From: Obrimoposthia wandeli
Taxonomy: Eukaryota
Direction: 5' to 3'
NCBI GenBank assembly: GCA_977020255.1
Contig: CDROCS010005497.1
Coordinates: 62,001 to 126,000 of the forward strand
Length of the DNA stretch: 64,000 nucleotides
The translations under genes were made by a program, and so were the position numbers. The notes beneath the pieces are model-generated. The model did no database searches and was not told where the DNA came from. It worked only from the letters and a program-made list of their open reading frames with translations. Positions 1,672 to 53,616 of the stretch are shown in pieces (within the stretch, counting starts at the first letter, position 1; every line of letters starts with the position of its first letter).

Positions 1672-1698
1672 ATATTATATCCTATCTTCATATGTCTA

Positions 1699-1730
1699 AT
1701 TATAGCCTACAGTCTCTTAAATATACCTTA
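1699..1730 (-). promoter_or_regulatory. Sigma70-like promoter TAAGG-N5-TTAAG-N11-TATAAT upstream of portal
   Basis: Minus strand reads TAAGG tatat TTAAG agactgtaggc TATAAT; the same spacing recurs at five other sites. Confidence 0.7.
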
Positions 1731-2174
1731 CTTAGTAGTAACAAGTTCAAAGTGAGGAGCATCATGAAAGCTCTGGTCACTAAATACATCATCACTATCC
1801 CAATCAATACCAAACCTAACGTTATGTGTAATCTCTCCAGAGGCTAGCAACATCTCCGTCACCATTTTCACTAGACCCATTAAGTAGTAAAACCTTCGAG
1901 TGTCTAGCTCTTTCCCACTAAAAGCATTAGTACCCTTTTTCCAAGGCATAATATCTACCGCCATGCTTGGATTAGATTGGTGTTTAGATTTCTTTCTAAT
2001 CCCATCCAGTGTACTCTTACCTTCCCTAAAATACTTCATCTGAGTAGCTTTAGTTCTTGCCCCCTCTAAGATAGAAAAATCATAATACTTTATCACACCC
2101 TCTAATATCTTCTGAATATCAGGGTGACATGTCTCTAATTGTTCTTTTGATTTAGTTCCAAATACGTAGCTCAT
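1728..2174 (-). CDS. Endolysin, M15-family (L-Ala-D-Glu type) peptidase
   Basis: DFSILEGAR, SKH...AVDI and DAPHFEL Zn-binding motifs; next to a holin. Confidence 0.85.
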   Translation of the reverse strand: MSYVFGTKSKEQLETCHPDIQKILEGVIKYYDFSILEGARTKATQMKYFREGKSTLDGIRKKSKHQSNPSMAVDIMPWKKGTNAFSGKELDTRRFYYLMGLVKMVTEMLLASGEITHNVRFGIDWDSDDVFSDQSFHDAPHFELVTTK

Positions 2175-4052: not shown

Positions 4053-5708
4053 TCATCTAAACAGTACTTTTACTAAAGTACCATTCTCTTCTGTTTCTCT
4101 AACCTCTAATACTCTATAAGAAGTTCCAACAATAGCTAAACCATTCTCGTCAGAATCAACCCTTTGACCTTTTGTAAGTGTTTGACCATCAGCAACTCTA
4201 ACCCATAGCTTACCAAGTAAACCTATTGGGCACCACTCATCTCTCTCGGCTCTTGAGGTGTGTTCTATGGATTCATCAAAGGTTGGGTTAACTACCCTAG
4301 TTACCTCTCTGTATGTTTCCATAATAGTATTACCATCTCCGTCTAGTTCACCAGTTGGTCTTTCAAACTCTTGCTCTTTCACTATGTATCTATCAAAGTC
4401 ATCTTTAAGGAATTTACCTTTCCAGTGTAGAGCATCACTGTCTCCAATAACTGCTGGTGCAGCAGAAGTAATCCCAAGAATATCAGTATTACCTTTTTCA
4501 ATTTTATCGCTCCCCTTTGCAAAAGATACAAAGTAACCGACATCGATAACCTCACCTGATGCCGTTTCAAAATACTCAGCATAATCCGCTGAAGCAACGT
4601 CAGCTGAACCATCAAAGTATCCATTACCAGCATTACTAACTTTAAATACTAAATTTGTGTCTGTAGTTGTAGCGTCTATATTTCCAGGATCAGATGCTCC
4701 ATATGCAACACCAAAAACCGTATTAGATGTGGTTCCTGCTCCACCGTACTTACCAACTACAACTGAAAAGTCTCCTGCTGAAGTAGTATTTAACCCTGTT
4801 GACAGTGAATGGTTCCCAGGAGAGGATGTATATTGAGAAAGAGCAATAGAAAAATCTCCATCCGCTACAGTACTTGATCCTGCAGAAATTGAAGCATACC
4901 CGTTAGCAGATGTGTACGAGCCAAGAGCCAATGAGTTCTCTCCGACCGAATTACAGTATGATCCAATTACAGTACTTCTATTACCGCTAGCAGTAGAGTT
5001 CCAGCCACCTATTGCTGAAGACTGTGAGGCAGAAGCAGTGTTGTATGCACCAAGCGTATAGCTTTGTGTTCCAGAAGAAGTAGAATCATAACCAGCAGAA
5101 AATGAGCCATAGCCAGATGCCTCAGAATGTTCACCAATAGAAACACCAGCTTCGCCAGATGCAACAGAAAACCTACCAATTGCTATGGAATTTTCACCAG
5201 TAGCCTTAGAATTTGGCATAATAGCAAAACTCTCTGATCCTGTAGCATAAGCTCTAATAAGCGCCACAGAATTTAAGTCAGCAAAACTACCAGAAGATAC
5301 TGAAAAGGAACCATTTGATGCAATACCACCAAGAGCAACAGAGTAATTTCCACTTGCTAGGCCTCCATTTATTGCAAAAGAGGAATACCCTCCAGCATTT
5401 GATCCATATCCAAAAGCAAAAGAGTAATCTCCTCCTGCACCCGTTGATATTGCGCCTTCATAGGGAGCAGGAGTAGAAAAGTCAATGGAATTATTACCTA
5501 TTGCTATATGATTTGAAGCAGGGTCTAGTCTTGCGGGAAGACCATAACCTATTTTACCATTCTCTATAAATTCTTTAAGATTTCCACCTTCTAGGCCAGT
5601 TAATCCACTACCGTCACCAGTGGGCGAGAGAACTACTGTGCCTATATGTCCAGTATGTACTGCAAGATTTCCACCTATTGTTGTACCGCCTCTTAATTTA
5701 TCACTCAT
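4053..5708 (-). CDS. Tail fibre/spike with YadA-like head repeats and C-terminal intramolecular chaperone (Peptidase_G2-like)
   Basis: Many xSxAxGxxSxAxG repeats; ADYAEYFE motif followed by a chaperone-like C-terminus. Confidence 0.75.
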   Translation of the reverse strand: MSDKLRGGTTIGGNLAVHTGHIGTVVLSPTGDGSGLTGLEGGNLKEFIENGKIGYGLPARLDPASNHIAIGNNSIDFSTPAPYEGAISTGAGGDYSFAFGYGSNAGGYSSFAINGGLASGNYSVALGGIASNGSFSVSSGSFADLNSVALIRAYATGSESFAIMPNSKATGENSIAIGRFSVASGEAGVSIGEHSEASGYGSFSAGYDSTSSGTQSYTLGAYNTASASQSSAIGGWNSTASGNRSTVIGSYCNSVGENSLALGSYTSANGYASISAGSSTVADGDFSIALSQYTSSPGNHSLSTGLNTTSAGDFSVVVGKYGGAGTTSNTVFGVAYGASDPGNIDATTTDTNLVFKVSNAGNGYFDGSADVASADYAEYFETASGEVIDVGYFVSFAKGSDKIEKGNTDILGITSAAPAVIGDSDALHWKGKFLKDDFDRYIVKEQEFERPTGELDGDGNTIMETYREVTRVVNPTFDESIEHTSRAERDEWCPIGLLGKLWVRVADGQTLTKGQRVDSDENGLAIVGTSYRVLEVRETEENGTLVKVLFR

Positions 5709-5736: not shown

Positions 5737-8700
5737 TCATAATATTTCTCCTGTGATTATACTGTTCTGTATCTTAAGTCCATCTTTATCTGATTTCATT
5801 TTAGTTTTAAATATAGCTTCTACATCAGCATCAGACATTGCTGACTGCTCAAATACATAATCTCTATGATATGCATCTGATTCACTGTCAGTATATTCAC
5901 CAACTTGCCACACTTGACTAGTTTCATCCCCATCTAAATGATACGCCTCTCCATTACCGTTTGTACTGTGTGTAATACCTGAACTGTTACCTAATGATAA
6001 ATGTAGACTAGCACCATATCTTCTGTAGCAAAAGAAATTCCACTCATTATCTATTACAGATATTCCAGATGTTGTCTGAGTTGACTCGCTAGTGTTGTTC
6101 GAGCTTGACCAAGCTTGCAGATTCCTACTTGTTGCTCCAGCACCCATTATAAGTATCCTATTATAGGTACTATTACTATTTGCTACATTTCTAGTTAAAC
6201 AAGGCCTGTATACACCATCAGCATAGGTCTTTGGGTGCCACCAGCCATATATAGTAAAGTCTTGTTTACAGTCTATAATATCATATGGTAAATGTAAGCT
6301 TGATTGTGGTCTTGCACCTTCAACAAAAGGAGCAGCAAACGTATTCGCCTCAAGCGCCCAATTAGCTAGATAATATTCAGTCTGAGCCATGCTGTAAAAT
6401 CCAGCAAGAGACACATAACTAGCAGTAATTCCACTTACTGTTCTAGTAAGCCTATACCAACCGTTCTCTACTGGGATAGCAGTAATTGTTGTGTTTACAT
6501 TTGCAGAGGCAGATAGATACATATATGAGCCAAGAATTGTGATTGGAACATTATCTACTCTTTTAATGTAGCACGTAAAAGTCCATTTGGTACTTGTTGT
6601 TGTACCAATGTCACCACCATTCAAATAGCAGTTGTTATTTGCACCAGGATAGTACCTTGTAACCTTTCTGCCTCTAAATGTTACACTCTCATCTACTGAA
6701 GCAGTAGGACCACTATCTCCAGCCCAAGGGGTTGAAGTTTGACCGTGAGCAGCAACAACATTTGTTGTTCCTCTACCAATCCAAACACCACCTTCTGGGT
6801 TATCATACACCGTGTTGGCATCATTAGGAACTATATCTTTATAGTAATCTTTACCATCAGAACTAAAAGGAAAATGTTTCCCACCTAAGTAATTCTCAGT
6901 TTCAATAGAGCCAGTAATCAAGCCATCTGTTGTGATACTATGAGTACCTTTAGCTAGCTTTTTAACTTCATCATCTGATAATGTTTTTCCAAAAATAGAT
7001 ACATTTTTAAATAAAGCATCACCTCTATTCCATCCCCAACCTAAATATAGTATTGGTATTCTTGTAGCAAAAACAGAAGAAGTTGTTGCTACTGAGCCAA
7101 GCAAAACATCATTTACATATAAGTATTGAGTTGTTGTATTCCATGATATGGTGATTCTTATCCACTCATTTATAGGTACAACATATGAGCTTGTCAAGGC
7201 TGAACCCTCAAAATCATGCATATATAAATTACTAGATGCATTTATGTATATTCCCCACCAAATTCCACCAGCAGTTGCATTACTAAGCACAGTTGTATTA
7301 GGTGCCCTCTTGCAAAAGTAGTCAAATGAAACTGAACTAGTTGTTGATAGTTGAGGTTTTAGGCCAAGAGTACCAGCGCTTCTTGAGTCTTCAATAAACT
7401 CAGTTGCAGACGAAGCAAGTTCACATTGAATTAATGCTACATCATAACTACCATACCCTCCCATATTAAAGTACATACTTGCGCTTCCTGTTTTGGTACA
7501 TGTAGCAGTGGTTGTGTATTGCTTCCAGTCTTCTGTAATACTCATGCTCTGCCCACTCCATGAAGCACCACTGTGGAATGAAAGATTAAATAAACTACCT
7601 ATACTAAGTGATGAAGAGGCTCTAATCCATAAACTAAATGTGTATACTTGCCCTGCAACAACTAAGGGTTGAACACCATAAGCCATAAAATCAACAGGGG
7701 CACTCTCAGCAAATCTATGCCATCTGTGCATTCTCATAAATGGGTAAGTTTTACCATTAAGCTCAAATTGATTTGGTATTATTTCCTTAACCAGTCCTGA
7801 ATTTGGCCTATGGGGATTACCGTGCCACATTGTAGGAAATGAAGTAGCATTTATAGGAACTCGGACATCGTTATTAACAGAGTCGTGTACGGAGTATCCT
7901 TGTGACCCATCTTGATTACTATTATAGGTATGAAGAGAAAATGAATTTGTAGAATGCTTCTTAATAAAGTATTCAGTACCAGCCGTAACTCCACCGCCAG
8001 AGGTGCCAGCATTAAGAACATCATAACTTCTTATGGTTCTACCAACAGTAGATAAAGTAACAATATTATTAGCAACACTTCCTATTGTGCCTATACTATA
8101 ATCGACATTAGAGTTATAATTATTTGTATTATAAGTCCCATGCCCATTTCCAACATTAAAAGTTCTATTTGCAAGGCCAGGTATTAAATTAGTAGTTGCA
8201 GCTTCAACAGCTACACCATAATTTGTTTTTGTTGTATTTGTATCAGTAGTTGGATCAGTATCAACTCCTCTTGATACCATACTAGGAAGTTCAGTCAATT
8301 GAATATCTTTAAATAAAGTATTACCAGAATACGTTACAAGGTATACAAAACCACTTGTAAATGATGTTCCTATGGCAATGTTGCTTAATGTCTGAACTCC
8401 ATTAATCCACGCATTAACCACACCATTTTCTACAGATAACGAGGCATCATACCATGTCCCATATGTCATGTTAAAACCTAATGCTGAGCCAGAACTTGAG
8501 GTAATATAGGCCTGCACGCTATTAACCCATTTCTGCACACGATTATCATCAGTTCCAGATCTAATGATCCATTGATACCCCTCGCTCATTCCAGAACTAC
8601 TACTGTTTGGATTATAGAATCCAATACCAGGATGAGAGCTATTTGTATTAATTTTAAAGTTAATACAAAAGTTCTTGTATGAAGCCTCTGAAATGTTTGT

Positions 8701-12615: not shown

Positions 12616-12647
12616 ATTATAACTAACAAGACCTTCAGGCCTCCTTA
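12616..12647 (-). promoter_or_regulatory. Sigma70-like promoter upstream of adaptor/tail operon
   Basis: Minus strand TAAGG aggcc TGAAG gtcttgttagt TATAAT. Confidence 0.6.
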
Positions 12648-14366
12648 GAAGACTGTGCTGCTAGTACTCTCGTCGTCGTCGTCAGTGTCAAAACTTCCCC
12701 ATACCCTAGAGTTGACATGTTCTCTCTCTAGTGTAACATTTCCCATACTAGGAAGTCTAACATCCATAGCTGCAATCATACTAATACAATCCAAGGCATC
12801 ATCGTGCTTAGACCCAATACCTTCATAAGTGATATAGTTTAACTCATTTAGTATCTCTTTCATATCAGGACTATCTTTAATTTCCTCAGGAAAATAAATC
12901 TTATGTCCTTGGAACAGTGGATGTACTCTCATAAACTGTTCATGTTTAGCTCCTGCAGCCCGTCTTCTACTTATACCTTCTTTACCATACGCAGCGCCAA
13001 TCTGCCGTGCAAAGGTAAAGTGTGTAGAATACTCTAACATCTGCTTCTTAAGTGCGTGTACATTCAACTGTTGTTGGCCATCAATCTCAACACCTACATA
13101 CGCATTTCTACCAAACTTAGCCGCCCACTCTCTTACCATCCTAAATATAGGCTCATACTGCTCAGATATACTCATCTTTTGTACACAAGCATCTAGCATA
13201 AACCAATCACCATTTGAACTAACAGCCCAAGCCATAATACCACTAAAATCCCCAGTAAGGCTATTACTAGCAGTAAGGTCAGTAGTAATATAGATGTTAT
13301 AATTATCCAAGTTCTTAATCAACGCTTTCCTAGAATACCATTGAACCTGTCCCTCTTTAACAAGCTTATCTTCCTCAGAACTAATTCTAAGCATAAGCTC
13401 CTGCTGAAAGGCTCTACCTTCTCCAGCTTCTTTCATATCTAGGTACCTGTCTTTAACTCTATCGTAGCTATGCATTTCTGGCCAAGCACCAATAAACTCA
13501 CTAGCCTTAGTCTCATCATTAATACCACTACAAATAGGAACAACTAGCGGAGTCCATCCACCTTCAATCGCAGAATAAACAATATCTTTTTTATTAAAAG
13601 GAGTACCAATTAAGATCTCCATTCCCCCTTGTGCTCGTAAAGCATGAGTAGCATCAGAGTAAATAGTTGACCTAATACTTTGCATAATAGTGTCAGACCG
13701 AGAGTCACTCTCATTCTTAACCATATCATCCCCAATAATTACATCAATTCTTTCTCCCTTATACCTCTCACCCCTGATACCCCCTTGTGCACCCTTAGTT
13801 CTAAACATAAACGATCTATCAGAAGCAGGCTCTGTACCTTGTCTTACAAGTTCAATCTCTGCATCTGTACATCTAATCTTCTCAAAATAGTTCTTAAGCA
13901 ACTCACTCTCTTCAATCATGTCTCTAAGAGTATTACACATTACTTTAGCACCACCTTCCTGAGAGGCACCAACACCAACAACAAATCTTACTTGATCACC
14001 AATCCCTGGTCTCTGTAGGCCTGGAAGTCTACCAAACATTGCCATATAGATAACTAAGAAGCAACTAAAAGTAGTTGACTTAGATAATCCTCGAGAACAT
14101 AATATTGCCAACTTATTCCTCTTAAGACGAACAGCAGCATTAACCTCCTCTGAATAGGGTAGGGAAGCTCTGTCGACGTTGTTAAACACTAGATCAATAA
14201 AGTAGTAGTGCAAAACAGGAATGCCCGCTGTGAAGAACCTAGGGCCCTTTATGAGCTGCATAGTATTCCAGAAGTGTAATGCCTCTTCACTAGGAGTATA
14301 ATTAGGGAATGTTAAGTCAATTGTATCTAGCAAATCATCCACTGTGGGTAATGTAGACTCAGCCAC
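12645..14366 (-). CDS. Terminase large subunit
   Basis: Walker A-like CSRGLSKST, Walker B VIIGDD, C-terminal nuclease with HDDALD. Confidence 0.9.
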   Translation of the reverse strand: MAESTLPTVDDLLDTIDLTFPNYTPSEEALHFWNTMQLIKGPRFFTAGIPVLHYYFIDLVFNNVDRASLPYSEEVNAAVRLKRNKLAILCSRGLSKSTTFSCFLVIYMAMFGRLPGLQRPGIGDQVRFVVGVGASQEGGAKVMCNTLRDMIEESELLKNYFEKIRCTDAEIELVRQGTEPASDRSFMFRTKGAQGGIRGERYKGERIDVIIGDDMVKNESDSRSDTIMQSIRSTIYSDATHALRAQGGMEILIGTPFNKKDIVYSAIEGGWTPLVVPICSGINDETKASEFIGAWPEMHSYDRVKDRYLDMKEAGEGRAFQQELMLRISSEEDKLVKEGQVQWYSRKALIKNLDNYNIYITTDLTASNSLTGDFSGIMAWAVSSNGDWFMLDACVQKMSISEQYEPIFRMVREWAAKFGRNAYVGVEIDGQQQLNVHALKKQMLEYSTHFTFARQIGAAYGKEGISRRRAAGAKHEQFMRVHPLFQGHKIYFPEEIKDSPDMKEILNELNYITYEGIGSKHDDALDCISMIAAMDVRLPSMGNVTLEREHVNSRVWGSFDTDDDDESTSSTVF

Positions 14367-15481: not shown

Positions 15482-15572
15482 TGGAGGAGAATGTCAGAAT
15501 CGAACTGACACAGGCTATTAACCTGACCTGGGTTCAAACCAGGGCCGATACCTAATTTCGGTTGAATTCTCC
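15482..15572 (-). tRNA. tRNA-Ser(TGA)
   Basis: Cloverleaf; anticodon arm CCTGG-TTTGAAC-CCAGG; long variable arm; CCA encoded. Confidence 0.9.
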
Positions 15573-15573
15573 A

Positions 15574-15645
15574 TGGTGGAGTATATCGGTAACGATCCGA
15601 TTCGCCGTCCTTGCAAAGGACAGGTCCAGCCCATCTGGATACCCC
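15574..15645 (-). tRNA. tRNA-Ala(TGC)
   Basis: Loop TTTGCAA; G3.U70 wobble; CCA; short D region. Confidence 0.85.
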
Positions 15646-15653
15646 TTATAATA

Positions 15654-15743
15654 TGGAAGAGAGTTACGGTCTCGAACCGTATGCTGCGAACGCAACACGA
15701 TTTGCTTAGCAAGCAATCTCAGAACCTATCTGATTAACTCTCC
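15654..15743 (-). tRNA. tRNA-Ser(GCT)
   Basis: Loop TTGCTAA; long variable arm; CCA. Confidence 0.9.
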
Positions 15744-15745
15744 AA

Positions 15746-15822
15746 TGGTAGTGGTGAAGGGACTCGAACCCTTAAGACCTGGTTTCTAAGACCAGTATGT
15801 ATGCCAATTCCATCACACCACT
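15746..15822 (-). tRNA. tRNA-Leu(TAG), short variable loop
   Basis: CTGGT-CTTAGAA-ACCAG; A73; CCA; variable region only 5 nt. Confidence 0.85.
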
Positions 15823-15834
15823 AAGTGTACTGTA

Positions 15835-15910
15835 TGGTACCTCCTCTGGGATTTGAACCCAGAAATTTCGGATTTTAAGTCCGTTGCCTATGCCGTTCGG
15901 CTAAGAAGGT
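15835..15910 (-). tRNA. tRNA-Leu(TAA), short variable loop
   Basis: Loop CTTAAAA; A73; CCA; variable region only 5 nt. Confidence 0.85.
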
Positions 15911-15912
15911 AA

Positions 15913-16000
15913 TGGTGGATGCCCTGAGAGTCGAACTCAGCACGTGTCTTTGTTACGGGTTTACAATCCGCTTAAACCAACCGATAGTTTACTGACATCC
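15913..16000 (-). tRNA. tRNA-Tyr(GTA)
   Basis: Loop TTGTAAA; long variable arm; CCA. Confidence 0.8.
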
Positions 16001-16031
16001 AATTAATAGTTTATTGCCAAATTCCGGGCAT

Positions 16032-16064
16032 AAAAAAAGGAGCCTACCCTTTCGAGTGACTCCT
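16032..16064 (-). terminator. Intrinsic terminator (attenuator) upstream of the six-tRNA operon
   Basis: Minus strand AGGAGTC-AC-TC-GAAA-GG-GT-A-GGCTCCT hairpin running into U7. Confidence 0.85.
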
Positions 16065-16099
16065 ATGTGACTTATTATAAAAACTAGGTATACTAGCTT

Positions 16100-16183
16100 T
16101 CAAATTCCACGAGGAGTCCTCTGCCGTGACGACAGATATAAACTATAAGATACTAAGGCTAGTAATGTAGTTAAACTCTTCAT
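16100..16183 (-). CDS. Leader peptide B (27 aa, MKSLTTLLALVSYSLYLSSRQRTPRGI)
   Basis: AAAGGA RBS; Ser/Leu/Tyr/Ala-rich; contains GACTCCT complementary to the terminator 5' arm. Confidence 0.8.
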   Translation of the reverse strand: MKSLTTLLALVSYSLYLSSRQRTPRGI

Positions 16184-16226
16184 GATATTTTCCTTTTATT
16201 TTTGTCTTTCAATGACTGTTATTCCA

Positions 16227-16258
16227 ATTATAGTATAGATATACTTAATCTAACCTTA
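16227..16258 (-). promoter_or_regulatory. Promoter of leader B / six-tRNA operon
   Basis: Minus strand TAAGG ttaga TTAAG tatatctatac TATAAT. Confidence 0.7.
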
Positions 16259-16699
16259 ACGATCACTACTTCTTCTACCTACTTTAGCTTTTGCTTCAGT
16301 CACTAACTGATCTACATCCGACATCATAGCACTTAAATGCTCATAGTCTTCACTATGTACCCAGCATACTGTAGCACCTGGGATTATGAACTTCGGCTTT
16401 TCAGAATAAAGTGCCATAAATTCATCCCCACCAATTCTATAAACTTCTTGTAAATTCTCTGTATGCTGTAATGCGTTAGCAATTTGTTTTATCAACGCAT
16501 CTCCTGCAGCATACCCTTGTTCTCTATTAACCTCATGCAAACCTACAACGTCTATCATTGCAAGCCAGAAAGGTGTACTTATCATTTGTTGTAAGGTCTC
16601 TGCTTCGAAGTCATGTCTTTGTTTTAACCCTGTAAGATAATCATATCTGTACATCTTAACCATGTTCTTCCAATGGACAATTTCTTGTTCTTTTGTCAT
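16256..16699 (-). CDS. Stand-alone GGDEF (diguanylate cyclase-like) protein
   Basis: DYLTGL, MIDVVGLHEVN...GYAAGDALI and an intact YRIGGDEF motif. Confidence 0.85.
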   Translation of the reverse strand: MTKEQEIVHWKNMVKMYRYDYLTGLKQRHDFEAETLQQMISTPFWLAMIDVVGLHEVNREQGYAAGDALIKQIANALQHTENLQEVYRIGGDEFMALYSEKPKFIIPGATVCWVHSEDYEHLSAMMSDVDQLVTEAKAKVGRRSSDR

Positions 16700-16766: not shown

Positions 16767-16840
16767 TGGTCCTCGATGATAGAATCGAACTATCGTTCCT
16801 CCCTAATCAGGGGAGTGCACTACCATTATACTAATCGAGA
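16767..16840 (-). tRNA. tRNA-Ile(GAT)
   Basis: CTCCC-CTGATTA-GGGAG; A73; CCA; unusual T at position 37. Confidence 0.75.
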
Positions 16841-16842
16841 AT

Positions 16843-16919
16843 TGGTCGGAAGGTCAAGAATCGAACTTGAATCTCTAGCTTTTCAGGCTAGCGCTCGTAA
16901 CCTAATGAGCTACCTTCCG
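16843..16919 (-). tRNA. tRNA-Phe(GAA)
   Basis: CTAGC-CTGAAAA-GCTAG; CCA. Confidence 0.9.
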
Positions 16920-16994
16920 TGGCGCCACATGAGAGAATTGAACTCTCCTTTCCGACTTGACAAGACGGCGTCCTAACCGATGGACGAATGCAGC
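16920..16994 (-). tRNA. tRNA-Asp(GTC)
   Basis: Loop TTGTCAA; G73; CCA. Confidence 0.85.
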
Positions 16995-17000
16995 TTAATA

Positions 17001-17074
17001 TGGATGAGACAAAAGGGCTCGAACCTTTGATAGGAGATTCAAAGTCTCCGGTGTTGCCACTACACTATATCTCA
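17001..17074 (-). tRNA. tRNA-Gln(TTG)
   Basis: GGAGA-CTTTGAA-TCTCC; CCA. Confidence 0.85.
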
Positions 17075-17077
17075 TTA

Positions 17078-17155
17078 TGGTGCCCAGTATTCGAGTCGAA
17101 CGAATAACCTTCTGCTTACAAGGCAGCTGCTCTAACCAATTGGAGCTAACCAGGC
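17078..17155 (-). tRNA. tRNA-Thr(TGT)
   Basis: Loop CTTGTAA; canonical D arm; CCA. Confidence 0.85.
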
Positions 17156-17158
17156 GTA

Positions 17159-17234
17159 TGGTCTAGATGGTAGGATTCGAACCTACGTGTTCCTCCGTCC
17201 AAGGGAGCCTGGAAACCATTCCCAGCACATCTAG
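17159..17234 (-). tRNA. tRNA-Pro(TGG)
   Basis: Loop CTTGGAC; C1-G72, A73; CCA. Confidence 0.85.
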
Positions 17235-17242
17235 TTTTATTT

Positions 17243-17318
17243 TGGAGTCCTTAGCCAGATTCAAACTAGCACCTCAGGGATTTGCAATCCCGCGCATTAA
17301 TCATTTTGCTATAAAGAC
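17243..17318 (-). tRNA. tRNA-Cys(GCA)
   Basis: Loop TTGCAAA; U73; CCA. Confidence 0.85.
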
Positions 17319-17320
17319 AT

Positions 17321-17398
17321 TGGAGGAAAGTATCGGAATCGAACCGATGTGTTCTAAATTCACAGCTTAGCGTCATTTCCAATTTTGACTACCCTTCC
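17321..17398 (-). tRNA. tRNA-His(GTG), atypical acceptor end
   Basis: CTAAG-CTGTGAA-TTTAG; CCA; no obvious G-1:C73 pair. Confidence 0.75.
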
Positions 17399-17445
17399 AA
17401 GATGAGGACATTTTAAGCCTGTCCTCTTAAGTACATAGTACTTAG

Positions 17446-17526
17446 CTCAACTGGTAGGACTCGAACCTACATAGGATTTCTCCCCAGATTAACAGTCTGG
17501 TGGACTACCGGATGTCCCACAGCTGA
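17446..17526 (-). tRNA. tRNA-Asn(GTT) with extended variable arm
   Basis: CCAGA-CTGTTAA-TCTGG; U1-A72, G73; 13-nt variable region with GGA-GAAA-TCC; CCA not encoded. Confidence 0.8.
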
Positions 17527-17549
17527 GCTAAACACTAAATTTCAGGCAT

Positions 17550-17586
17550 AAAAAAAGGGTTCAACCAAATTAATGATCAAACCCTT
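17550..17586 (-). terminator. Intrinsic terminator (attenuator) upstream of the nine-tRNA operon
   Basis: Minus strand AAGGGTTTGATCA-TTAATT-TGGTTGAACCCTT (13 bp with G.U pairs) running into U7. Confidence 0.85.
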
Positions 17587-17612
17587 CTTTCTCTACCAGT
17601 TGTTTTTACACA

Positions 17613-17702
17613 TTACAAGGTATAGACATGAAGGGTTCTCAGCACTGTAGGCTGATTATGGTTAACAATTCTAAAATCACAAGTAGTTGATAACGTGTTC
17701 AT
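17613..17702 (-). CDS. Leader peptide A (29 aa, MNTLSTTCDFRIVNHNQPTVLRTLHVYTL)
   Basis: AAAGGA RBS; contains GAACCCTTC complementary to the terminator 5' arm. Confidence 0.8.
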   Translation of the reverse strand: MNTLSTTCDFRIVNHNQPTVLRTLHVYTL

Positions 17703-17753
17703 GTATATTCCTTTTCTATTTATATGTTTTACTATTTCTCTTTAACATTCCCA

Positions 17754-17785
17754 ATTATAGCACTAGCTACCTTAAACAGACCTTA
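17754..17785 (-). promoter_or_regulatory. Promoter of leader A / nine-tRNA operon (extended -10)
   Basis: Minus strand TAAGG tctgt TTAAG gtagctagTGc TATAAT. Confidence 0.75.
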
Positions 17786-17947
17786 ACCATTAATAATCTT
17801 TAGTAATCTTCTTCGTTCTTGATGATACCTTAGCCATTCTGTCTTAAGCCAAAAGCCTTGAGGTAAGCAATACTCATCATCTAACTCATCTAGTAATACT
17901 TCAGGGTCAGTCTCATCCTCTACTACTTTACTTATAATAAAAAACAT
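17783..17947 (-). CDS. Small acidic hypothetical protein (54 aa)
   Basis: Manual translation MFFIISKVVEDETDPEVLLDELDDEY...; start overlaps the upstream stop. Confidence 0.45.
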   Translation of the reverse strand: MFFIISKVVEDETDPEVLLDELDDEYCLPQGFWLKTEWLRYHQERRRLLKIING

Positions 17948-34284: not shown

Positions 34285-34864
34285 TGAAATGTATATTAGC
34301 TCCGGAGTTCAAGAAAGGCTTAGTATCAATAGGTAAGTTCTTCCTTTTTCTGTTCATACTACTACCAATAGCACTTTTACTTCTAGGAGCAATCTTATTT
34401 CTTATGGGGTATGCAACATACCATCTATTACCCTACGGTGTCTCTGATTTCTTCCTTCAAGACCACAAAGCTTATGCAAGTTTAGAAGACATTATGCTTC
34501 ATATAGGTCTAGGACAGCTATTAGCTATCATTGTCTTTACGATAGTATTTGGAGTAAGTCACATAGTTTACACAGAAAGTAAAGAATCAATAAGACAAAA
34601 ACACAATTACAATCTATATAGATTCGAAGACGTAGAATATCCTATTTGGAGAACTCTACTAAGTTACATAATTGTATGCTCTCCACCTCCCAAGGACAAG
34701 TAATGAAAAAATGGATAATAATCTATAGATTTGGTTACTCAGATACAGACTCACAAATTATAGAATTTAACGGGAAGCCTACTAAAAAAGATGCTGCAAG
34801 TCTATTAGACATGGAACCTGAAAAGATTCTATACATCAAGAAGAAAAAGAAAAAGGACAAATAA
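34284..34864 (+). other. Membrane protein (34284-34703) and small basic ORF (34703-34864)
   Basis: ORFs with overlapping stop/start codons. Confidence 0.55.
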
Positions 34865-47287: not shown

Positions 47288-47367
47288 GTCGTAGTAGCTC
47301 AGTTGGTAGAGCGCCTTCCCTGTAAAATGGAGAAGAGGTCGCAGGTTCAAGTCCTGCCGTCGGCACC
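47288..47367 (+). tRNA. Degenerate tRNA-like gene (Tyr-type loop CTGTAAA)
   Basis: Canonical D arm GCTC-AGTTGGTA-GAGC and T arm GCAGG-TTCAAGT-CCTGC; mismatched acceptor; enlarged anticodon loop. Confidence 0.5.
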
Positions 47368-50919: not shown

Positions 50920-52306
50920 ATGAACTACTTAAAAGCAGCATCAGCAATAGACGGATACAAAGCATCACACAAAGACCAATACCCAAAAGGTACAGACTAC
51001 GTATACTCTAACTTAACTCCAAGACACTCTAAGCACTTCGCTTACAAAGACTTCGACGGACGAGTAGTTGTATTCGGAAACCAATCAATGGTAAAATTCA
51101 TTCATGAATTATGGCAAGACACATTCTTTAACAAACCTGCTGACGAAGTAGTACCTGCACTATTCAGAAGATTATCAAACTACTCAGGGCATAAAGACGT
51201 ACAGCATTTCCATGACTTACACAGAAAAGGTTGCTTACCAGTAGTAATAAAATCCTTAGTAGAAGGTACTAAATCACCATTAGGTGTACCAACATTAACA
51301 ATTGCAAACACACACAAAGACTTTGCATGGATCGTTAACTACCTAGAAACAATCATCTCTGCAGAATCATGGCACACTATGACTTCAGCAACAGTATCAC
51401 ACCAATACAAGAAACTATTAAAACAATGGTCAGACTTAACGTGTGACGACGAATTACACTTACCATTCCAAGCCCACGATTTCTCAATGAGAGGACAAAC
51501 ATCTGTACACTCTGCAGCTAAATCTGGAGCTGGACATTTACTTTCGTTCGCTGGAACTGACACTGTACCTTCGATAGACTTCTTAGAGTACTACTACAAA
51601 GCTGACTGTGAACAGGAACTAGTAGGTTGCTCAATTCCCGCAACTGAGCATTCGACTATGACGACTGGAATCCAAGTAAACATGGACAAAGGTTTATCAT
51701 TACGAGATGCCGAAACAAAAGTATTCAAAAGACTATTAACTAAAACATATCCAACAGGACTATTTGCAGCAGTTTCAGACAGTTACAACTTCTGGGACAC
51801 ATTAACAATAACATTACCTAAACTAAAATCAGAAATTTTAGCAAGACCTATGACAGTAATTAGAAATATAGGAGATCCAACAGCTCCGGGTAAACTAGTT
51901 ATTAGGCCTGATTCTGGAAATCCTATTGATGTTATCTGTGGATTTAGAGTATTAGAAGGGGACCATACAGATGGAGTAAACAAAACACTAGTATTAGATA
52001 ATAACTATAACGTAATTTTAGACAATGGAGTGTACTATAAAGTAGATGGATATTATCACGATGATGGCTGCTGGGTAAACACTCACGCTAATGAAACCAA
52101 CATTACAGCTTCAGAAGCAAAAGGTGCTATCCAAGTATTATGGGAAATCTTTGGAGGAACTACGAACTCTAAAGGTTACAAAGTACTTGACCCTCACATC
52201 GGACTAATCTACGGAGACTCAATCACTCTTGACAGAGCTGACGAAATCTGTAAAAGATTAGAATCACAAGGCTTTGCATCTTCCAATATCGTATTTGGAA
52301 TTGGGT
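50920..52306 (+). CDS. nadV: Nicotinamide phosphoribosyltransferase-like protein, exon 1
   Basis: DGYKASH, HDFSMRG, IPATEHS, VSDSYNFW, IRPDSG, IYGDSIT; splicing restores NIVFGIGSYSFQ. Confidence 0.88.
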
Positions 52307-52590
52307 TAACTTATAATGGCCCCTTTAAGAAGTAATTCTTATCGAAAAACTTATTGAATTGCGGGAACTTTCGACAATCATAAACTACTAAACCTAGGTG
52401 GCGACACACTAGGTGGTGAGAATTAACTACTCTCAGTACAGTAAAAAGGTCTATGATCGATCAATCCGCAGCCAAGCCTCTCAGAAATGAGTGGAAGGTT
52501 CAGAGACTATCCCGAAAGGGAGTAGGCCCGTCAGGCCGAAGCAGTAAGCCCCTACTAAGGTAGGGTGATGATATAGTCCATTCAGTTACT

Positions 52591-52622
52591 TAAGTATTAA
52601 TTAAGTGCTAGTATGTTATACT
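52591..52622 (+). promoter_or_regulatory. Internal promoter for the intron endonuclease
   Basis: TAAGT attaa TTAAG tgctagtaTGt TATACT followed by a CAGGAG RBS. Confidence 0.6.
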
Positions 52623-52650: not shown

Positions 52651-53616
52651 ATGACAAACAAAGAAAAATTTATAGAAAAAGCAAATAGAAAGTACAGTAA
52701 TAAATTTGATTATTCACAGTTCACATACCTCAACGCTAAGACCAAAGGGACCCTAGTCTGCCCTACACATGGAGAATTTCTTCAAAACCCTGATAAGCAC
52801 CTTACATCTAAATATGGATGTCCAGTATGTGCATTAGAAGGAAGAATAGAAACATCTACAGGGGTATCTACAGTAGGCTGCCCTAAATATACTTGGGAAG
52901 AGCAGAAGAGTAGACTGGAAACTAGGTTTCCTTCACTTACATTCACCTGTGAAAAATATGAAGTAACTACTTCAACTGTAATAGGACTATGCCCAGAACA
53001 TGGGACGTTTGAAACAACATCAGCCACATTACTTAGAAAAAATGCTAAGTTTGGATGTAAGTCCTGTGGAGTTGCTGGAGCGAAAGCCACAAGAACCGGG
53101 ACTTTCAGAGAATTTATCTTACAAGCTTCCAAAATATTCAATAACAAGTACACTTATAAGTGTGATAATTACATGAATAAGAAGAGTATAGTTACCTGTA
53201 CATGTGATGTACATGGGGACTTTAATAAATCTGCTCAAAAGCATGTAGGGGGCCAAGGTTGTCCTAGATGTAATATTGATGCCCTTATACTCCAAGGAAA
53301 ACTCCCTGGAGGTTACTGTGAAACTATATTTTCTCGCAGCGATGCATTAAAAAATAAACCTGCTACAATCTACTACCTAAAAATGGGTAGCCTATACAAA
53401 ATAGGAATAACTATAAATTTAAAACGAAGACTATCAAACATATCCTCAAAAGCTTCTATACCTATAGAAGTGATAGACACCTTTGATACATCACTATATG
53501 AGGCATACCTTTTAGAGCAACAGCTTCTAGAAAAGTATGCAGAGTATAGGACAAGTAATGAATTCTCGACAGAGCTTTTTACTTGGGATGTACTAGAAGG
53601 AAAAATACTTAAGTAA
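52651..53616 (+). CDS. Intron-encoded homing endonuclease (CPxHG zinc-ribbon repeats plus GIY-YIG-like C-terminus)
   Basis: Three CPxHGxF...GCPxC repeats; IYYLK...LYKIGIT...RRL. Confidence 0.8.
   Translation: MTNKEKFIEKANRKYSNKFDYSQFTYLNAKTKGTLVCPTHGEFLQNPDKHLTSKYGCPVCALEGRIETSTGVSTVGCPKYTWEEQKSRLETRFPSLTFTCEKYEVTTSTVIGLCPEHGTFETTSATLLRKNAKFGCKSCGVAGAKATRTGTFREFILQASKIFNNKYTYKCDNYMNKKSIVTCTCDVHGDFNKSAQKHVGGQGCPRCNIDALILQGKLPGGYCETIFSRSDALKNKPATIYYLKMGSLYKIGITINLKRRLSNISSKASIPIEVIDTFDTSLYEAYLLEQQLLEKYAEYRTSNEFSTELFTWDVLEGKILK

What the first reader, a model, noticed from the sequence alone, without database searches (positions are those of the whole stretch)
15482..16258. Leader-peptide attenuator B: Ser/Leu/Tyr/Ala sensor for the six-tRNA operon
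Seen (minus strand): second promoter (16227-16258), RBS, ORF 16183-16100 MKSLTTLLALVSYSLYLSSRQRTPRGI, a GAAA-capped terminator plus U7 (16064-16032), then tRNAs Tyr, Leu(TAA), Leu(TAG), Ser(GCT), Ala, Ser(TGA). Fourteen of the first 19 codons are S/L/A/Y. They include TTA x4, CTA, CTG, AGT x2, TCT/TCG/TCA and TAT x2, so both Leu and both Ser isoacceptor classes are sampled. GACUCCU (16118-16112) is the perfect complement of the terminator 5' arm AGGAGUC. The two leaders act as internal controls for each other: each matches its own tRNA set, not the other's. Both terminators end in the same UUUUUUUAUGCC tail. Inference: a modular, codon-resolved tRNA-demand sensor.
Basis: partly seen in the sequence, partly recalled or inferred. 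Interest (0 to 1): 0.93.

Follow-up and report, generated by a model that had tools for sequence, protein, structure and literature searches.

The report
Leader-peptide attenuator gating phage tRNA genes
A phage places a tiny translated "test" gene and a stop signal for transcription in front of a block of tRNA genes, and the test gene is written in exactly the codons those tRNAs read, so the phage probably makes more tRNA only when ribosomes stall for lack of it; such control is not known for tRNA genes.

Summary
On the minus strand there is a promoter-like motif (16259-16227), a Shine-Dalgarno site, a 27-codon ORF (16183-16100), a GAAA-capped hairpin with U7 (16064-16032), and then five tRNAs called by ARAGORN. 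A sixth, Tyr-like cloverleaf was called by no tool.

- 14 of 26 leader residues are S/L/A/Y (binomial P 0.004). The twin leader A matches its own nine tRNAs.
- Two metagenomic relatives carry four more cassettes whose peptides track their own arrays. For example, Cys codons sit wherever the Cys tRNA sits.
- Two unbiased scans for terminator-then-tRNA found four unrelated phage contigs with the same design. Other small ORFs upstream of tRNAs were unmatched. Combined P for 12 leaders is about 1e-21.
- ORF nt 57-80 pair with the terminator 5' arm in both window leaders and two relatives, with different sequences each time. Codon shuffles almost never reproduce this.
- Ribosome-masked folding gives read-through for stalls at codons 1-17 and termination at codons 18 to stop.

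Seven full-text searches found no earlier description, and a word search of this scan's notes found none on other DNA. I read it as a new variant of ribosome-mediated attenuation, aimed at tRNA genes. No experiment exists yet.

The parts
16227..16259 (-). Promoter-like motif TTAAG-N6-TTAAG-N10-CTATAAT (TATAAT at 16232-16227). It has no canonical -35.
   Evidence: The same motif with the same spacing precedes leader A and the portal-like ORF at 1732-1696, and precedes leaders in L069 and L020.
16190..16196 (-). Shine-Dalgarno AAAGGAA, 7 nt upstream of the AUG.
   Evidence: AAGGAA-N4-6-ATGA is shared by all six cassettes of the three related phages.
16100..16183 (-). Leader ORF of 27 codons plus stop. 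Codons 2-19 hold 14 S/L/A/Y codons.
16173..16190 (-). Segment 1 (translation initiation region including the AUG). It pairs with segment 2 in the ribosome-free fold.
   Evidence: 16-bp helix 16190-16173 with 16119-16102; -14.1 kcal/mol
16102..16121 (-). Segment 2 (codons 21-27, core GACUCCU at 16118-16112). It can pair with either segment 1 or segment 3.
16078..16102 (-). Spacer hairpin between the stop codon and the terminator.
16074..16103 (-). Sigma-70-like TTGAAA-18-TATAAT (11 of 12 matches) inside the spacer. It is not conserved in the other leaders and its role is unknown.
   Evidence: absent in leader A and in relatives
16054..16064 (-). Segment 3, the terminator 5' arm AGGAGUCACUC.
16039..16049 (-). 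Segment 4, the terminator 3' arm. The loop is GAAA at 16053-16050.
16027..16038 (-). U7 tract plus the conserved AUGCC tail.
15913..16000 (-). tRNA-Tyr-like gene (anticodon GTA, CCA end, no variable-arm stem). Its status is uncertain.
   Evidence: not called; cloverleaf; aligns to the L019 Tyr tRNA
15482..15910 (-). tRNA array B: Leu-taa, Leu-tag, Ser-gct, Ala-tgc, Ser-tga.
17545..17787 (-). Twin cassette A: promoter 17787-17751, 29-codon ORF 17702-17613, segment 2 at 17646-17630, hairpin 17584-17557, U7 17556-17550, AUGCC.
16767..17526 (-). tRNA array A: Asn His Cys Pro Thr Gln Asp Phe Ile.
16256..16699 (-). 147-aa GGDEF-domain ORF between the two arrays. It was used as the anchor to find relatives.

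Best explanation
I read the region as a ribosome-mediated transcription attenuator that gates a phage tRNA array.

Proposed sequence of events:
1. Transcription starts about 37 nt upstream of the AUG, at a phage-type promoter with a perfect TATAAT.
2. A ribosome loads on the nascent leader and translates 27 codons. Codons 2-19 are almost only Ser, Leu, Ala and Tyr codons, which are the ones read by the tRNAs encoded just downstream.
3. If those tRNAs are plentiful, the ribosome runs on to codons 20-27 and the stop. There it covers segment 2 (16121-16102). Segments 3 and 4 then fold into the GAAA-capped hairpin, and RNA polymerase terminates at the U7 tract.
4. If any of these tRNAs is scarce, uncharged or cleaved, the ribosome stalls in codons 1-17. 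This keeps segment 1 (the initiation region) occupied. Segment 2 is then free to pair with the terminator 5' arm, the terminator cannot form, and polymerase reads into the tRNA genes and probably on into the late genes.
5. With no ribosome at all, segments 1 and 2 pair and termination again wins.

The newly made tRNAs relieve the stall, so the circuit is a negative-feedback homeostat for tRNA supply, one module per array.

Shown here: the sequence parts, the composition match, its recurrence, the alternative helices and their compensatory variation, and the predicted switch.

Inferred: that the ORF is translated, that the hairpin terminates the polymerase in use, and that read-through responds to tRNA supply.
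For: Anatomy.

Composition:
- W_B has 14/26 residues in its set (P 4e-3) and W_A has 17/28 with all nine amino acids present (coverage alone P 0.009; joint with the 17/28 enrichment, P 1.5e-3). Against the other array's set the peptides score only 0.21-0.23.
- Relatives found through the GGDEF gene carry the same promoter, SD, ORF and terminator cassette with peptides that follow their own arrays. The L069 leader at 8537-8617 scores 21/25 for Ala Glu Thr Val Lys Gly Met Asp. L019 3651-3740 scores 17/28 for His Pro Gln Met Asn Ile. L020 3065-3178 scores 34/36 with all 14 amino acids present. Fisher combined P is 1.4e-12.
- Relocated tRNAs take their codons along. The Cys tRNA is in array A here and Cys is in leader A. 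In L019 the Cys tRNA is in array 3 and two Cys codons are in leader 3. Thr and Asp behave likewise.

Independent lineages:
- Two unbiased scans for 'T-run followed by a tRNA' gave L244 (three cassettes; the first scores 24/33, P 6e-6, including two Trp), L357 (12/19, all six amino acids), L370 and L408.
- In the same samples, apart from two nested frames of one L339 ORF without a T-run (P 1.6e-4 and 7.5e-4), one low-complexity ORF (L239) and T5.070, the other small SD-ORFs upstream of tRNAs gave P from 0.08 to 0.9.
- Over 12 leaders the combined P is 1e-21.
- Codon level: L244 leader 1 uses AGT for 4 of 5 Ser codons and sits before Ser-gct. Leader 3 uses TCN for 9 of 11 and sits before Ser-gga and Ser-tga.

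Structure:
- ORF nt 61-75 are complementary to the terminator 5' arm in W_A, W_B and two L019 leaders (-13.7 to -15.5 kcal/mol; codon-shuffle P 0.026, 0.0013, 0.012, 0.007). The position is the same and the sequences differ.
- The initiation region pairs with segment 2 in all four.
- Ribosome-masked partition functions for W_B give P(terminator) of at most 0.35 for A-site codons 1-17, at least 0.86 from codon 18 to the stop, and 0.79 for free RNA.
- Shuffled ORFs matched the switch in 1, 0, 0 and 0 of 120 trials.

Spacing and layout:
- The stop to T-run distance is 53-61 nt in 10 of 12 cassettes.
- There is no room for a promoter between the T-run and the first tRNA-like gene (31 nt here), so the tRNAs must be reached by read-through.
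Against: - No transcript, ribosome-footprint or reporter data exist.
- Seven of the 12 cassettes (L069 leader 1, L020, L244 x3, L357, L370) show no convincing antiterminator in equilibrium folding.
- L019 leader 3 has six Ser codons but no Ser tRNA was found in that contig. Its three Arg codons are AGA while the tRNA there is Arg-acg.
- Most amino acids appear only one to six times and not in runs, so a stall at a single codon must suffice.
- The nine C-terminal codons of W_B are unmatched. I explain this by their RNA-pairing role.
- A sigma-70-like promoter sits inside the spacer.
- The polymerase that uses the TTAAG-repeat promoter is unknown. A fast phage-type polymerase would uncouple from ribosomes.
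- The hydrophobic W_B peptide could have a role of its own.
- The background amino-acid frequencies came from this window only.
Confidence: 0.7

Rival explanations
1. General translation-status sensor. The cassette is a real attenuator, but it reads whether a ribosome initiates and keeps pace at all (ribosome availability, global slowdown). It would not read the supply of particular tRNAs, and the codon bias would be secondary.
For: Segment 1 is the initiation region itself (SD and AUG), so any ribosome sitting there favours the antiterminator. Most matched amino acids occur only a few times and never in long runs.
Against: This does not explain why each leader is enriched for its own array's amino acids and depleted of the sister array's. 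It does not explain why rare Cys and Trp codons appear exactly where Cys and Trp tRNAs follow. It does not explain why Ser codon families follow the Ser isoacceptor present.
Confidence: 0.1
2. Independent micro-gene. Promoter, ORF and terminator form a complete unit that makes a small peptide (or a small RNA) with its own function. The tRNAs would be made only by leaky read-through or from other promoters.
For: The unit is formally complete. The W_B peptide has a hydrophobic core and a basic tail like small membrane peptides. A promoter-like site lies inside the spacer.
Against: The peptides of the other cassettes are not hydrophobic and share no sequence apart from the first few residues (M-K/R-S/T-L/I in several) and, between the two L019 leaders, the last five. 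What they all share is position, length, spacing and a match to the downstream tRNAs. Codon-level matching and the compensatory helices between ORF and terminator arm are not expected for a peptide gene. There is no space for a promoter between the T-run and the tRNA.
Confidence: 0.1
3. Post-transcriptional role. Leader translation controls the processing or stability of the tRNA precursor (for example access for RNase E or RNase P, or Rho loading) rather than intrinsic termination.
For: Seven of the 12 cassettes lack a predicted antiterminator although they have matched peptides and strong hairpins. The conserved AUGCC tail after the U tract has no role in the attenuator model.
Against: The hairpins are canonical intrinsic terminators: 9-11 bp, G+C-rich base, U6-U9. 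In both window leaders the alternative pairing is strong, position-conserved and rare among shuffles.
Confidence: 0.07
4. Chance ORF plus ordinary terminator. The hairpin merely ends transcription of the upstream GGDEF gene, and the ORF is meaningless.
For: Short ORFs are common in A+T-rich DNA. The simple terminator scan did not even list this hairpin because of its bulge.
Against: A promoter motif lies between the GGDEF stop and the ORF. A strong SD and an ATG are kept in all cassettes. Combined composition P is 1e-12 to 1e-21. The design recurs in unrelated phages.
Confidence: 0.03

Closest known systems
Leader-peptide attenuators of amino-acid operons (trpL, hisL, leuL; multivalent thrL and ilvL of ilvGMEDA). 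This comparison rests on established knowledge.
   Same: Promoter-proximal short ORF with SD; regulatory codons; four segments giving 1:2, 2:3 and 3:4 pairings; intrinsic terminator with a U tract; a stall upstream gives read-through; ribosome at the stop, or no ribosome, gives termination. Sensing several amino acids in one leader, as in thrL and ilvL.
   Different: The genes controlled are tRNA genes, not biosynthetic enzymes. Up to 14 amino acids are sampled, mostly once to six times and not in runs. Segment 1 is the initiation region itself. The element sits in a lytic phage and comes as exchangeable modules, one per tRNA array.
pheST leader (pheM) attenuator of phenylalanyl-tRNA synthetase in E. 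coli. This comparison rests on established knowledge.
   Same: Leader-peptide attenuation used to adjust a component of the translation apparatus to the supply of one charged tRNA.
   Different: It controls a protein gene and senses one amino acid through a run of Phe codons. Here the product is the sensed tRNA species itself, which closes a direct feedback loop.
T-box riboswitches
   Same: Terminator/antiterminator choice set by the state of a specific tRNA, matched through a codon-like specifier.
   Different: A T-box binds uncharged tRNA directly, needs no translation, and controls aaRS and amino-acid genes. No T-box model matches this window.
tRNA clusters of phages T4 and T5
   Same: Arrays of phage tRNA genes interspersed with small ORFs and homing-endonuclease genes.
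   Different: In the T5 tRNA region my screen found no SD-ORF plus terminator cassette with a matched peptide. The one Cys-rich ORF next to tRNA-Cys looks like a zinc ribbon and has no terminator.

Membership tests
Ribosome-mediated (leader-peptide) transcription attenuators | Short ORF with SD and start codon directly downstream of a promoter | tested here: met
Ribosome-mediated (leader-peptide) transcription attenuators | Leader enriched in codons cognate to what is regulated | tested here: met
   W_B 14/26, P 4e-3; 12 leaders combined P 1e-21; cross-pairings are not enriched
Ribosome-mediated (leader-peptide) transcription attenuators | Intrinsic terminator between the leader ORF and the regulated genes | tested here: met
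   10-bp stem, GAAA loop, U7, -12.8 kcal/mol
Ribosome-mediated (leader-peptide) transcription attenuators | Mutually exclusive antiterminator that uses the terminator 5' arm, with its upstream strand placed so that a ribosome at the stop codon masks it | tested here: met
   (met for W_A, W_B, two L019 leaders and L408; not for seven other cassettes)
Ribosome-mediated (leader-peptide) transcription attenuators | Anti-antiterminator (1:2) that gives termination without translation | tested here: met
   16-bp helix 16190-16173 with 16119-16102; free-RNA P(terminator) 0.79
Ribosome-mediated (leader-peptide) transcription attenuators | Read-through in vivo depends on leader translation and on charged-tRNA supply | not testable with these tools
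   Needs reporter, Term-seq or Ribo-seq experiments
Ribosome-mediated (leader-peptide) transcription attenuators | Regulated genes encode amino-acid biosynthesis enzymes or aminoacyl-tRNA synthetases (all described members, to my knowledge) | tested here: not met
   The downstream genes are tRNAs. Seven literature searches found no tRNA-gene case
T-box riboswitch | Match to the T-box leader model (stem I specifier, T-box sequence) | tested here: not met
   No Rfam hit at the gathering threshold or at E<=1
Small hydrophobic toxin / membrane peptide gene | Conserved hydrophobic peptide across homologous loci | tested here: not met
   Only W_B and the S/L-rich leaders are hydrophobic. W_A and the L069, L019, L020 and L357 leaders are polar
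Bacterial-type tRNA-Tyr (for 16000-15913) | Cloverleaf with GUA anticodon and a long, base-paired variable arm; called by tRNA finders | tested here: inconclusive
   Cloverleaf, GUA and CCA are present. It aligns to the L019 Tyr tRNA. There is no variable-arm stem, and neither ARAGORN nor Rfam calls it

The most novel reading that the evidence does not exclude
Phages of several unrelated lineages regulate their tRNA arrays with modular, codon-resolved demand sensors. Each array carries its own leader ORF written in the codons of that array. tRNA synthesis is then switched on when the host's matching tRNAs run out, for example after host tRNA decay or attack by anticodon nucleases, and switched off once the phage tRNAs restore decoding. 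When tRNA genes move between arrays, the leaders are rewritten to follow them.
Probability: 0.55. Interest if true: 0.9.

Novelty: new variant of a known kind. Interest (0 to 1): 0.85.

Why it matters
Why phages carry tRNAs, and how they control them, has been debated for decades. The competing ideas are codon compensation, replacement of decaying host tRNAs, and escape from tRNA-cleaving defences.

A leader that reads the very codons of the downstream tRNAs would be the first known case of transcription attenuation acting on tRNA genes. It would also be a direct feedback loop in which the sensed molecule is the product.

It gives a testable handle on which tRNAs become limiting during infection, because the leader spells them out. 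It supplies a natural, portable sensor of decoding capacity for single codons. It also offers a sequence signature (SD-ORF, terminator, array, with matched composition) for annotating phage genomes. Its recurrence in at least seven phage contigs with four different promoter types suggests convergent or widely exchanged design.

Tried and rejected
- Near-identical DNA in GenBank phages: none. Distant blastn found only tRNA-level matches.
- Terminase relatives in IMG/VR, JGI metagenomes and the large protein collection: the closest (71-82% identity) have no tRNAs at all, so they could not test conservation. They do show that the tRNA block is an accessory insertion.
- Exact pattern of the terminator tail in IMG/VR: only chance hits without tRNAs.
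- GGDEF-gene relatives in IMG/VR and further ENA contigs: mostly without tRNAs.
- Promoter-motif scan: many hits in other phages. Only two weak Lys-leader candidates, L102 and L113, neither significant.
- Vibrio phage 115E34-1, which shares similar tRNAs, has no such leader.
- The T5 tRNA region has none.
- T-box and any other Rfam family: no match.
- I rejected the hydrophobic-peptide reading because the sister leaders are polar.
- I did not build a covariance model or use the count of structure pairs. The leaders are too divergent to align reliably, so I counted pairs by anchored positions in a script instead.
Full report
**What the window is.** The window is part of a tailed phage with no close relative in GenBank.
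- Its large terminase (12645-14366, minus strand) is about 35% identical to terminases of N4-like podophages.
- Minus-strand genes from 18832 down to 1 are structural or late genes: virion protein, tail fibre, pre-neck appendage.
- Plus-strand genes from 19262 onward lie on the opposite strand; I did not annotate them.
- Two tRNA arrays lie at the head of the late block. Array A (17526-16767) holds Asn His Cys Pro Thr Gln Asp Phe Ile. Array B (15910-15482) holds Leu-taa Leu-tag Ser-gct Ala Ser-tga.
- A 147-aa GGDEF ORF lies between the arrays.
- The nearest terminase relatives (71-82% identity: L018, L190, L192) have the flanking genes but no tRNAs. The whole block is therefore an accessory insertion.

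**Checking the observation.**
- The 27-codon ATG ORF is at 16183-16100.
- AAAGGAA lies 7 nt upstream of the AUG.
- A hairpin at 16064-16039 has a GAAA loop and -12.8 kcal/mol, followed by T7.
- The tail TTTTTTATGCC occurs exactly twice in 64 kb, once after each leader.
- The heptamer at 16118-16112 is the exact complement of 16064-16058.
- The 'promoter' is a motif, TTAAG-N6-TTAAG-N10-CTATAAT. It is shared with leader A and with the start of a portal-like gene at 1732-1696. It is therefore a promoter class of this phage, with a perfect -10 and no canonical -35.
- Weak point: the 'Tyr tRNA' (16000-15913) is called neither by ARAGORN nor by Rfam. It folds into a cloverleaf with anticodon GUA and a CCA end and aligns to a genuine Tyr tRNA of a relative, but its variable arm has no stem.

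**Is the codon match more than chance?** I took amino-acid frequencies from the long ORFs of the window.
- Leader B has 14 of 26 residues in S/L/A/Y (background 0.27, P 0.004).
- Leader A has 17 of 28 in its nine-residue set, with all nine present, including single Cys, Asp, Phe, Ile, Gln and Pro. Coverage alone has P 0.009; jointly with the 17/28 enrichment, P 0.0015.
- Crossed pairings score 0.21 and 0.23, below background.

**Out-of-sample test in relatives.** The GGDEF protein has about 20 homologues. Two sit in phage contigs with tRNA arrays. Both carry the same cassette: the TTAAG-repeat promoter (rearranged in L019 leader 3), AAGGAA-N4-6-ATGA and an ORF of 26-37 codons. The three in contig L069/L019 also have a hairpin with U6-U9 whose T-run starts 54-59 nt after the stop. 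L020 has only a weak hairpin with a UUAUUCU tract 35 nt after the stop.

Contig L069/L019 has three cassettes:
- Before Ala Glu Thr Val Lys Gly Met Asp: 21 of 25 residues in the set, all eight present.
- Before His Pro Gln Met Asn Ile: 17 of 28.
- Before Leu Leu Arg Cys Tyr: 11 of 29.

Contig L020 has one cassette, before 16 tRNAs. It scores 34 of 36 in the set, with all 14 amino acids present and only one Lys and one Leu outside. The combined P for the six leaders is 1.4e-12.

The differences are the most telling part.
- The Cys tRNA is in array A here and Cys is in leader A. In L019 the Cys tRNA is in the third array and leader 3 has two Cys codons.
- Thr and Asp tRNAs sit in the first array of L069. 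Its leader has five Thr and one Asp, while the homologue of leader A there has almost none.

Exceptions: L019 leader 3 keeps six Ser codons although no Ser tRNA was found in that contig. Its Arg codons are AGA while the tRNA is Arg-acg.

**Independent lineages and an empirical null.** I scanned IMG/VR twice for a T-run followed at tRNA distance by a T-loop, with no condition on any ORF. I then scored every SD-preceded ATG ORF of 15-60 codons that ended within 200 nt upstream of a same-strand tRNA.
- Most such ORFs gave P between 0.08 and 0.9.
- The best scores came from the window, the two relatives and four unrelated contigs.
- L244 (219 kb, with its own promoter motif) has three cassettes. 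One scores 24 of 33 for Thr Leu Ser Asn Trp Pro, with two Trp codons (P 6e-6). One is Lys-rich and sits before three Lys tRNAs. One is Ser/Gly-rich and sits before Gly Ser Gly.
- L357 has a 20-codon leader holding all six amino acids of its array, with two Trp.
- L370 is S/F/Y-rich before three Ser, one Phe and two Tyr tRNAs.
- L408 has two Cys and one Trp before Cys and Trp tRNAs.
- At codon level, L244 leader 1 uses AGT for 4 of 5 Ser codons before Ser-gct and avoids TTA, where no Leu-taa gene follows. Leader 3 uses TCN for 9 of 11 before Ser-gga and Ser-tga.
- Over 12 leaders the combined binomial P is 1e-21.
- This figure uses one background composition and treats homologous leaders as independent, so it is rough. 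The pattern itself is not in doubt.
- Phage T5 and a Vibrio phage with similar tRNAs have no such cassette, so the design is not universal.

**Structure.**
- In leader B the ribosome-free minimum-energy fold pairs the initiation region (16190-16173, including the AUG) with 16119-16102 and forms the terminator.
- With a 28-nt footprint placed at each A-site codon, the probability of the terminator is 0.00-0.35 for codons 1-17 and 0.86-0.96 from codon 18 to the stop. For free RNA it is 0.79.
- In the stalled states, 16118-16112 pairs with 16064-16058 and 16110-16107 pairs with 16070-16067.
- The matched S/L/A/Y codons occupy codons 2-18, which is the window in which a stall is predicted to give read-through. 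The unmatched C-terminal codons encode segment 2.
- The same plan holds for leader A and two L019 leaders. ORF nt 57-80 pair with positions -16 to -34 from the T-run (-15.8 to -20.4 kcal/mol), and the initiation region pairs with the same ORF segment (-12.8 to -17.2). The sequences differ in each case.
- Codon-shuffled ORFs reach the observed ORF-to-arm duplex with P 0.026, 0.0013, 0.012 and 0.007. They reach the observed switch in 0-1 of 120 trials.
- L408 behaves likewise.
- Seven cassettes (L069 leader 1, L020, the three of L244, L357, L370) show no convincing equilibrium antiterminator. This limits the generality of the structural model but not of the composition rule.
- The stop to T-run distance is 53-61 nt in 10 of 12 cassettes.

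**Mechanism.** There are only 31 nt between the U tract and the first tRNA-like gene (21 nt for leader A). The tRNAs can therefore be reached only by reading through the hairpin. The simplest reading is classical ribosome-mediated attenuation, with the tRNA genes as the target:
- a stall for want of a decodable tRNA gives the antiterminator and tRNA synthesis;
- smooth translation gives termination.

The product relieves the stall, so each module would be a homeostat. Transcripts that pass may also feed the late genes downstream. The perfect TATAAT suggests the host polymerase, which is compatible with coupling, but this is inferred.

**Comparison with what is known, and novelty.**
- The architecture meets the structural criteria of leader-peptide attenuators (trp, his, thr, ilv, pheA, pheST; from established knowledge).
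- It differs in its target (tRNA genes), in its breadth (up to 14 amino acids, mostly without runs), in using the initiation region as segment 1, and in being a repeated module in phages.
- It is not a T-box.
- Seven full-text searches found no description of attenuation of tRNA genes or of leader ORFs matched to phage tRNA arrays.
- The scan's own notes hold nothing similar under those words.
- I file it as a new variant of a known kind.

**Verdict.** My confidence in the attenuator model for the window's leader B is 0.7.

Noticed in passing
window 16256-16699 (-): A 147-aa ORF that is little more than a GGDEF domain (the GGDEF motif is intact) sits between the two tRNA arrays. About 20 homologues of 142-162 aa occur in phage-like metagenomic contigs. 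It may be a minimal phage diguanylate cyclase.
   Followed up: partly
window 52297-52600 (+): A group I intron (Rfam 77 bits) lies between ORFs 50920-52335 and 52651-53616. These are probably the two halves of one gene.
   Followed up: no
window 47288-47367 (+): ARAGORN reports a tRNA-like gene with a four-base anticodon (gtaa). Rfam scores it as tRNA at 42 bits.
   Followed up: no
L019 6565-6639; L020 4081-4154: The related phages carry suppressor-type tRNAs (anticodon CTA and anticodon TTA) inside the regulated arrays. The L020 leader ends in TAG, followed by six in-frame codons before a TAA. This may link to stop-codon recoding.
   Followed up: no
L186 3025-4225; L022 2981-5001: Gene-free stretches of 1.2-2 kb with no tRNA lie next to GGDEF homologues in other phage contigs. 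They might encode large non-coding RNAs.
   Followed up: no
window 1696-1732 (-), and IMG/VR loci L070-L181: The promoter motif TTAAG-N6-TTAAG-N10-MTATAAT also precedes the portal-like gene. It occurs several times in some large IMG/VR contigs (132-183 kb), so it may be a promoter class shared by distant phages.
   Followed up: partly
window 16074-16103 (-): A near-consensus sigma-70 promoter (TTGAAA-18-TATAAT) lies between the leader stop codon and the terminator. It is found only in leader B. A transcript from it would begin just before the hairpin.
   Followed up: partly
L069 9053-9553 and 14620-15054: HNH endonuclease genes are inserted between tRNA genes of the related phage, as in T5. 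One insertion coincides with the place where the Ser tRNAs of array B are missing.
   Followed up: no
L432 (phage T5) record 34627-34755: T5.070, a 42-aa ORF ending 6 nt before tRNA-Cys, has five Cys in CxxC pairs. It looks like a zinc ribbon rather than a leader.
   Followed up: partly
L102 5873-5926; L113 12171-12203: Two further phage contigs with the TTAAG-repeat promoter have very short SD-ORFs (17 and 10 codons, with 3 and 2 Lys). Each is followed by a hairpin and by Lys tRNAs. This is suggestive but not significant.
   Followed up: partly
L339 4504-4632: A 42-codon SD-ORF (and a nested 19-codon frame, 4573-4632) between tRNA-Ile-tat and a Pro Asn Leu Arg Lys array has 23 of 41 residues in that set (P 1.6e-4; nested frame P 7.5e-4) but no T-run or terminator follows it. 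I did not count it among the 12 leaders.
   Followed up: partly
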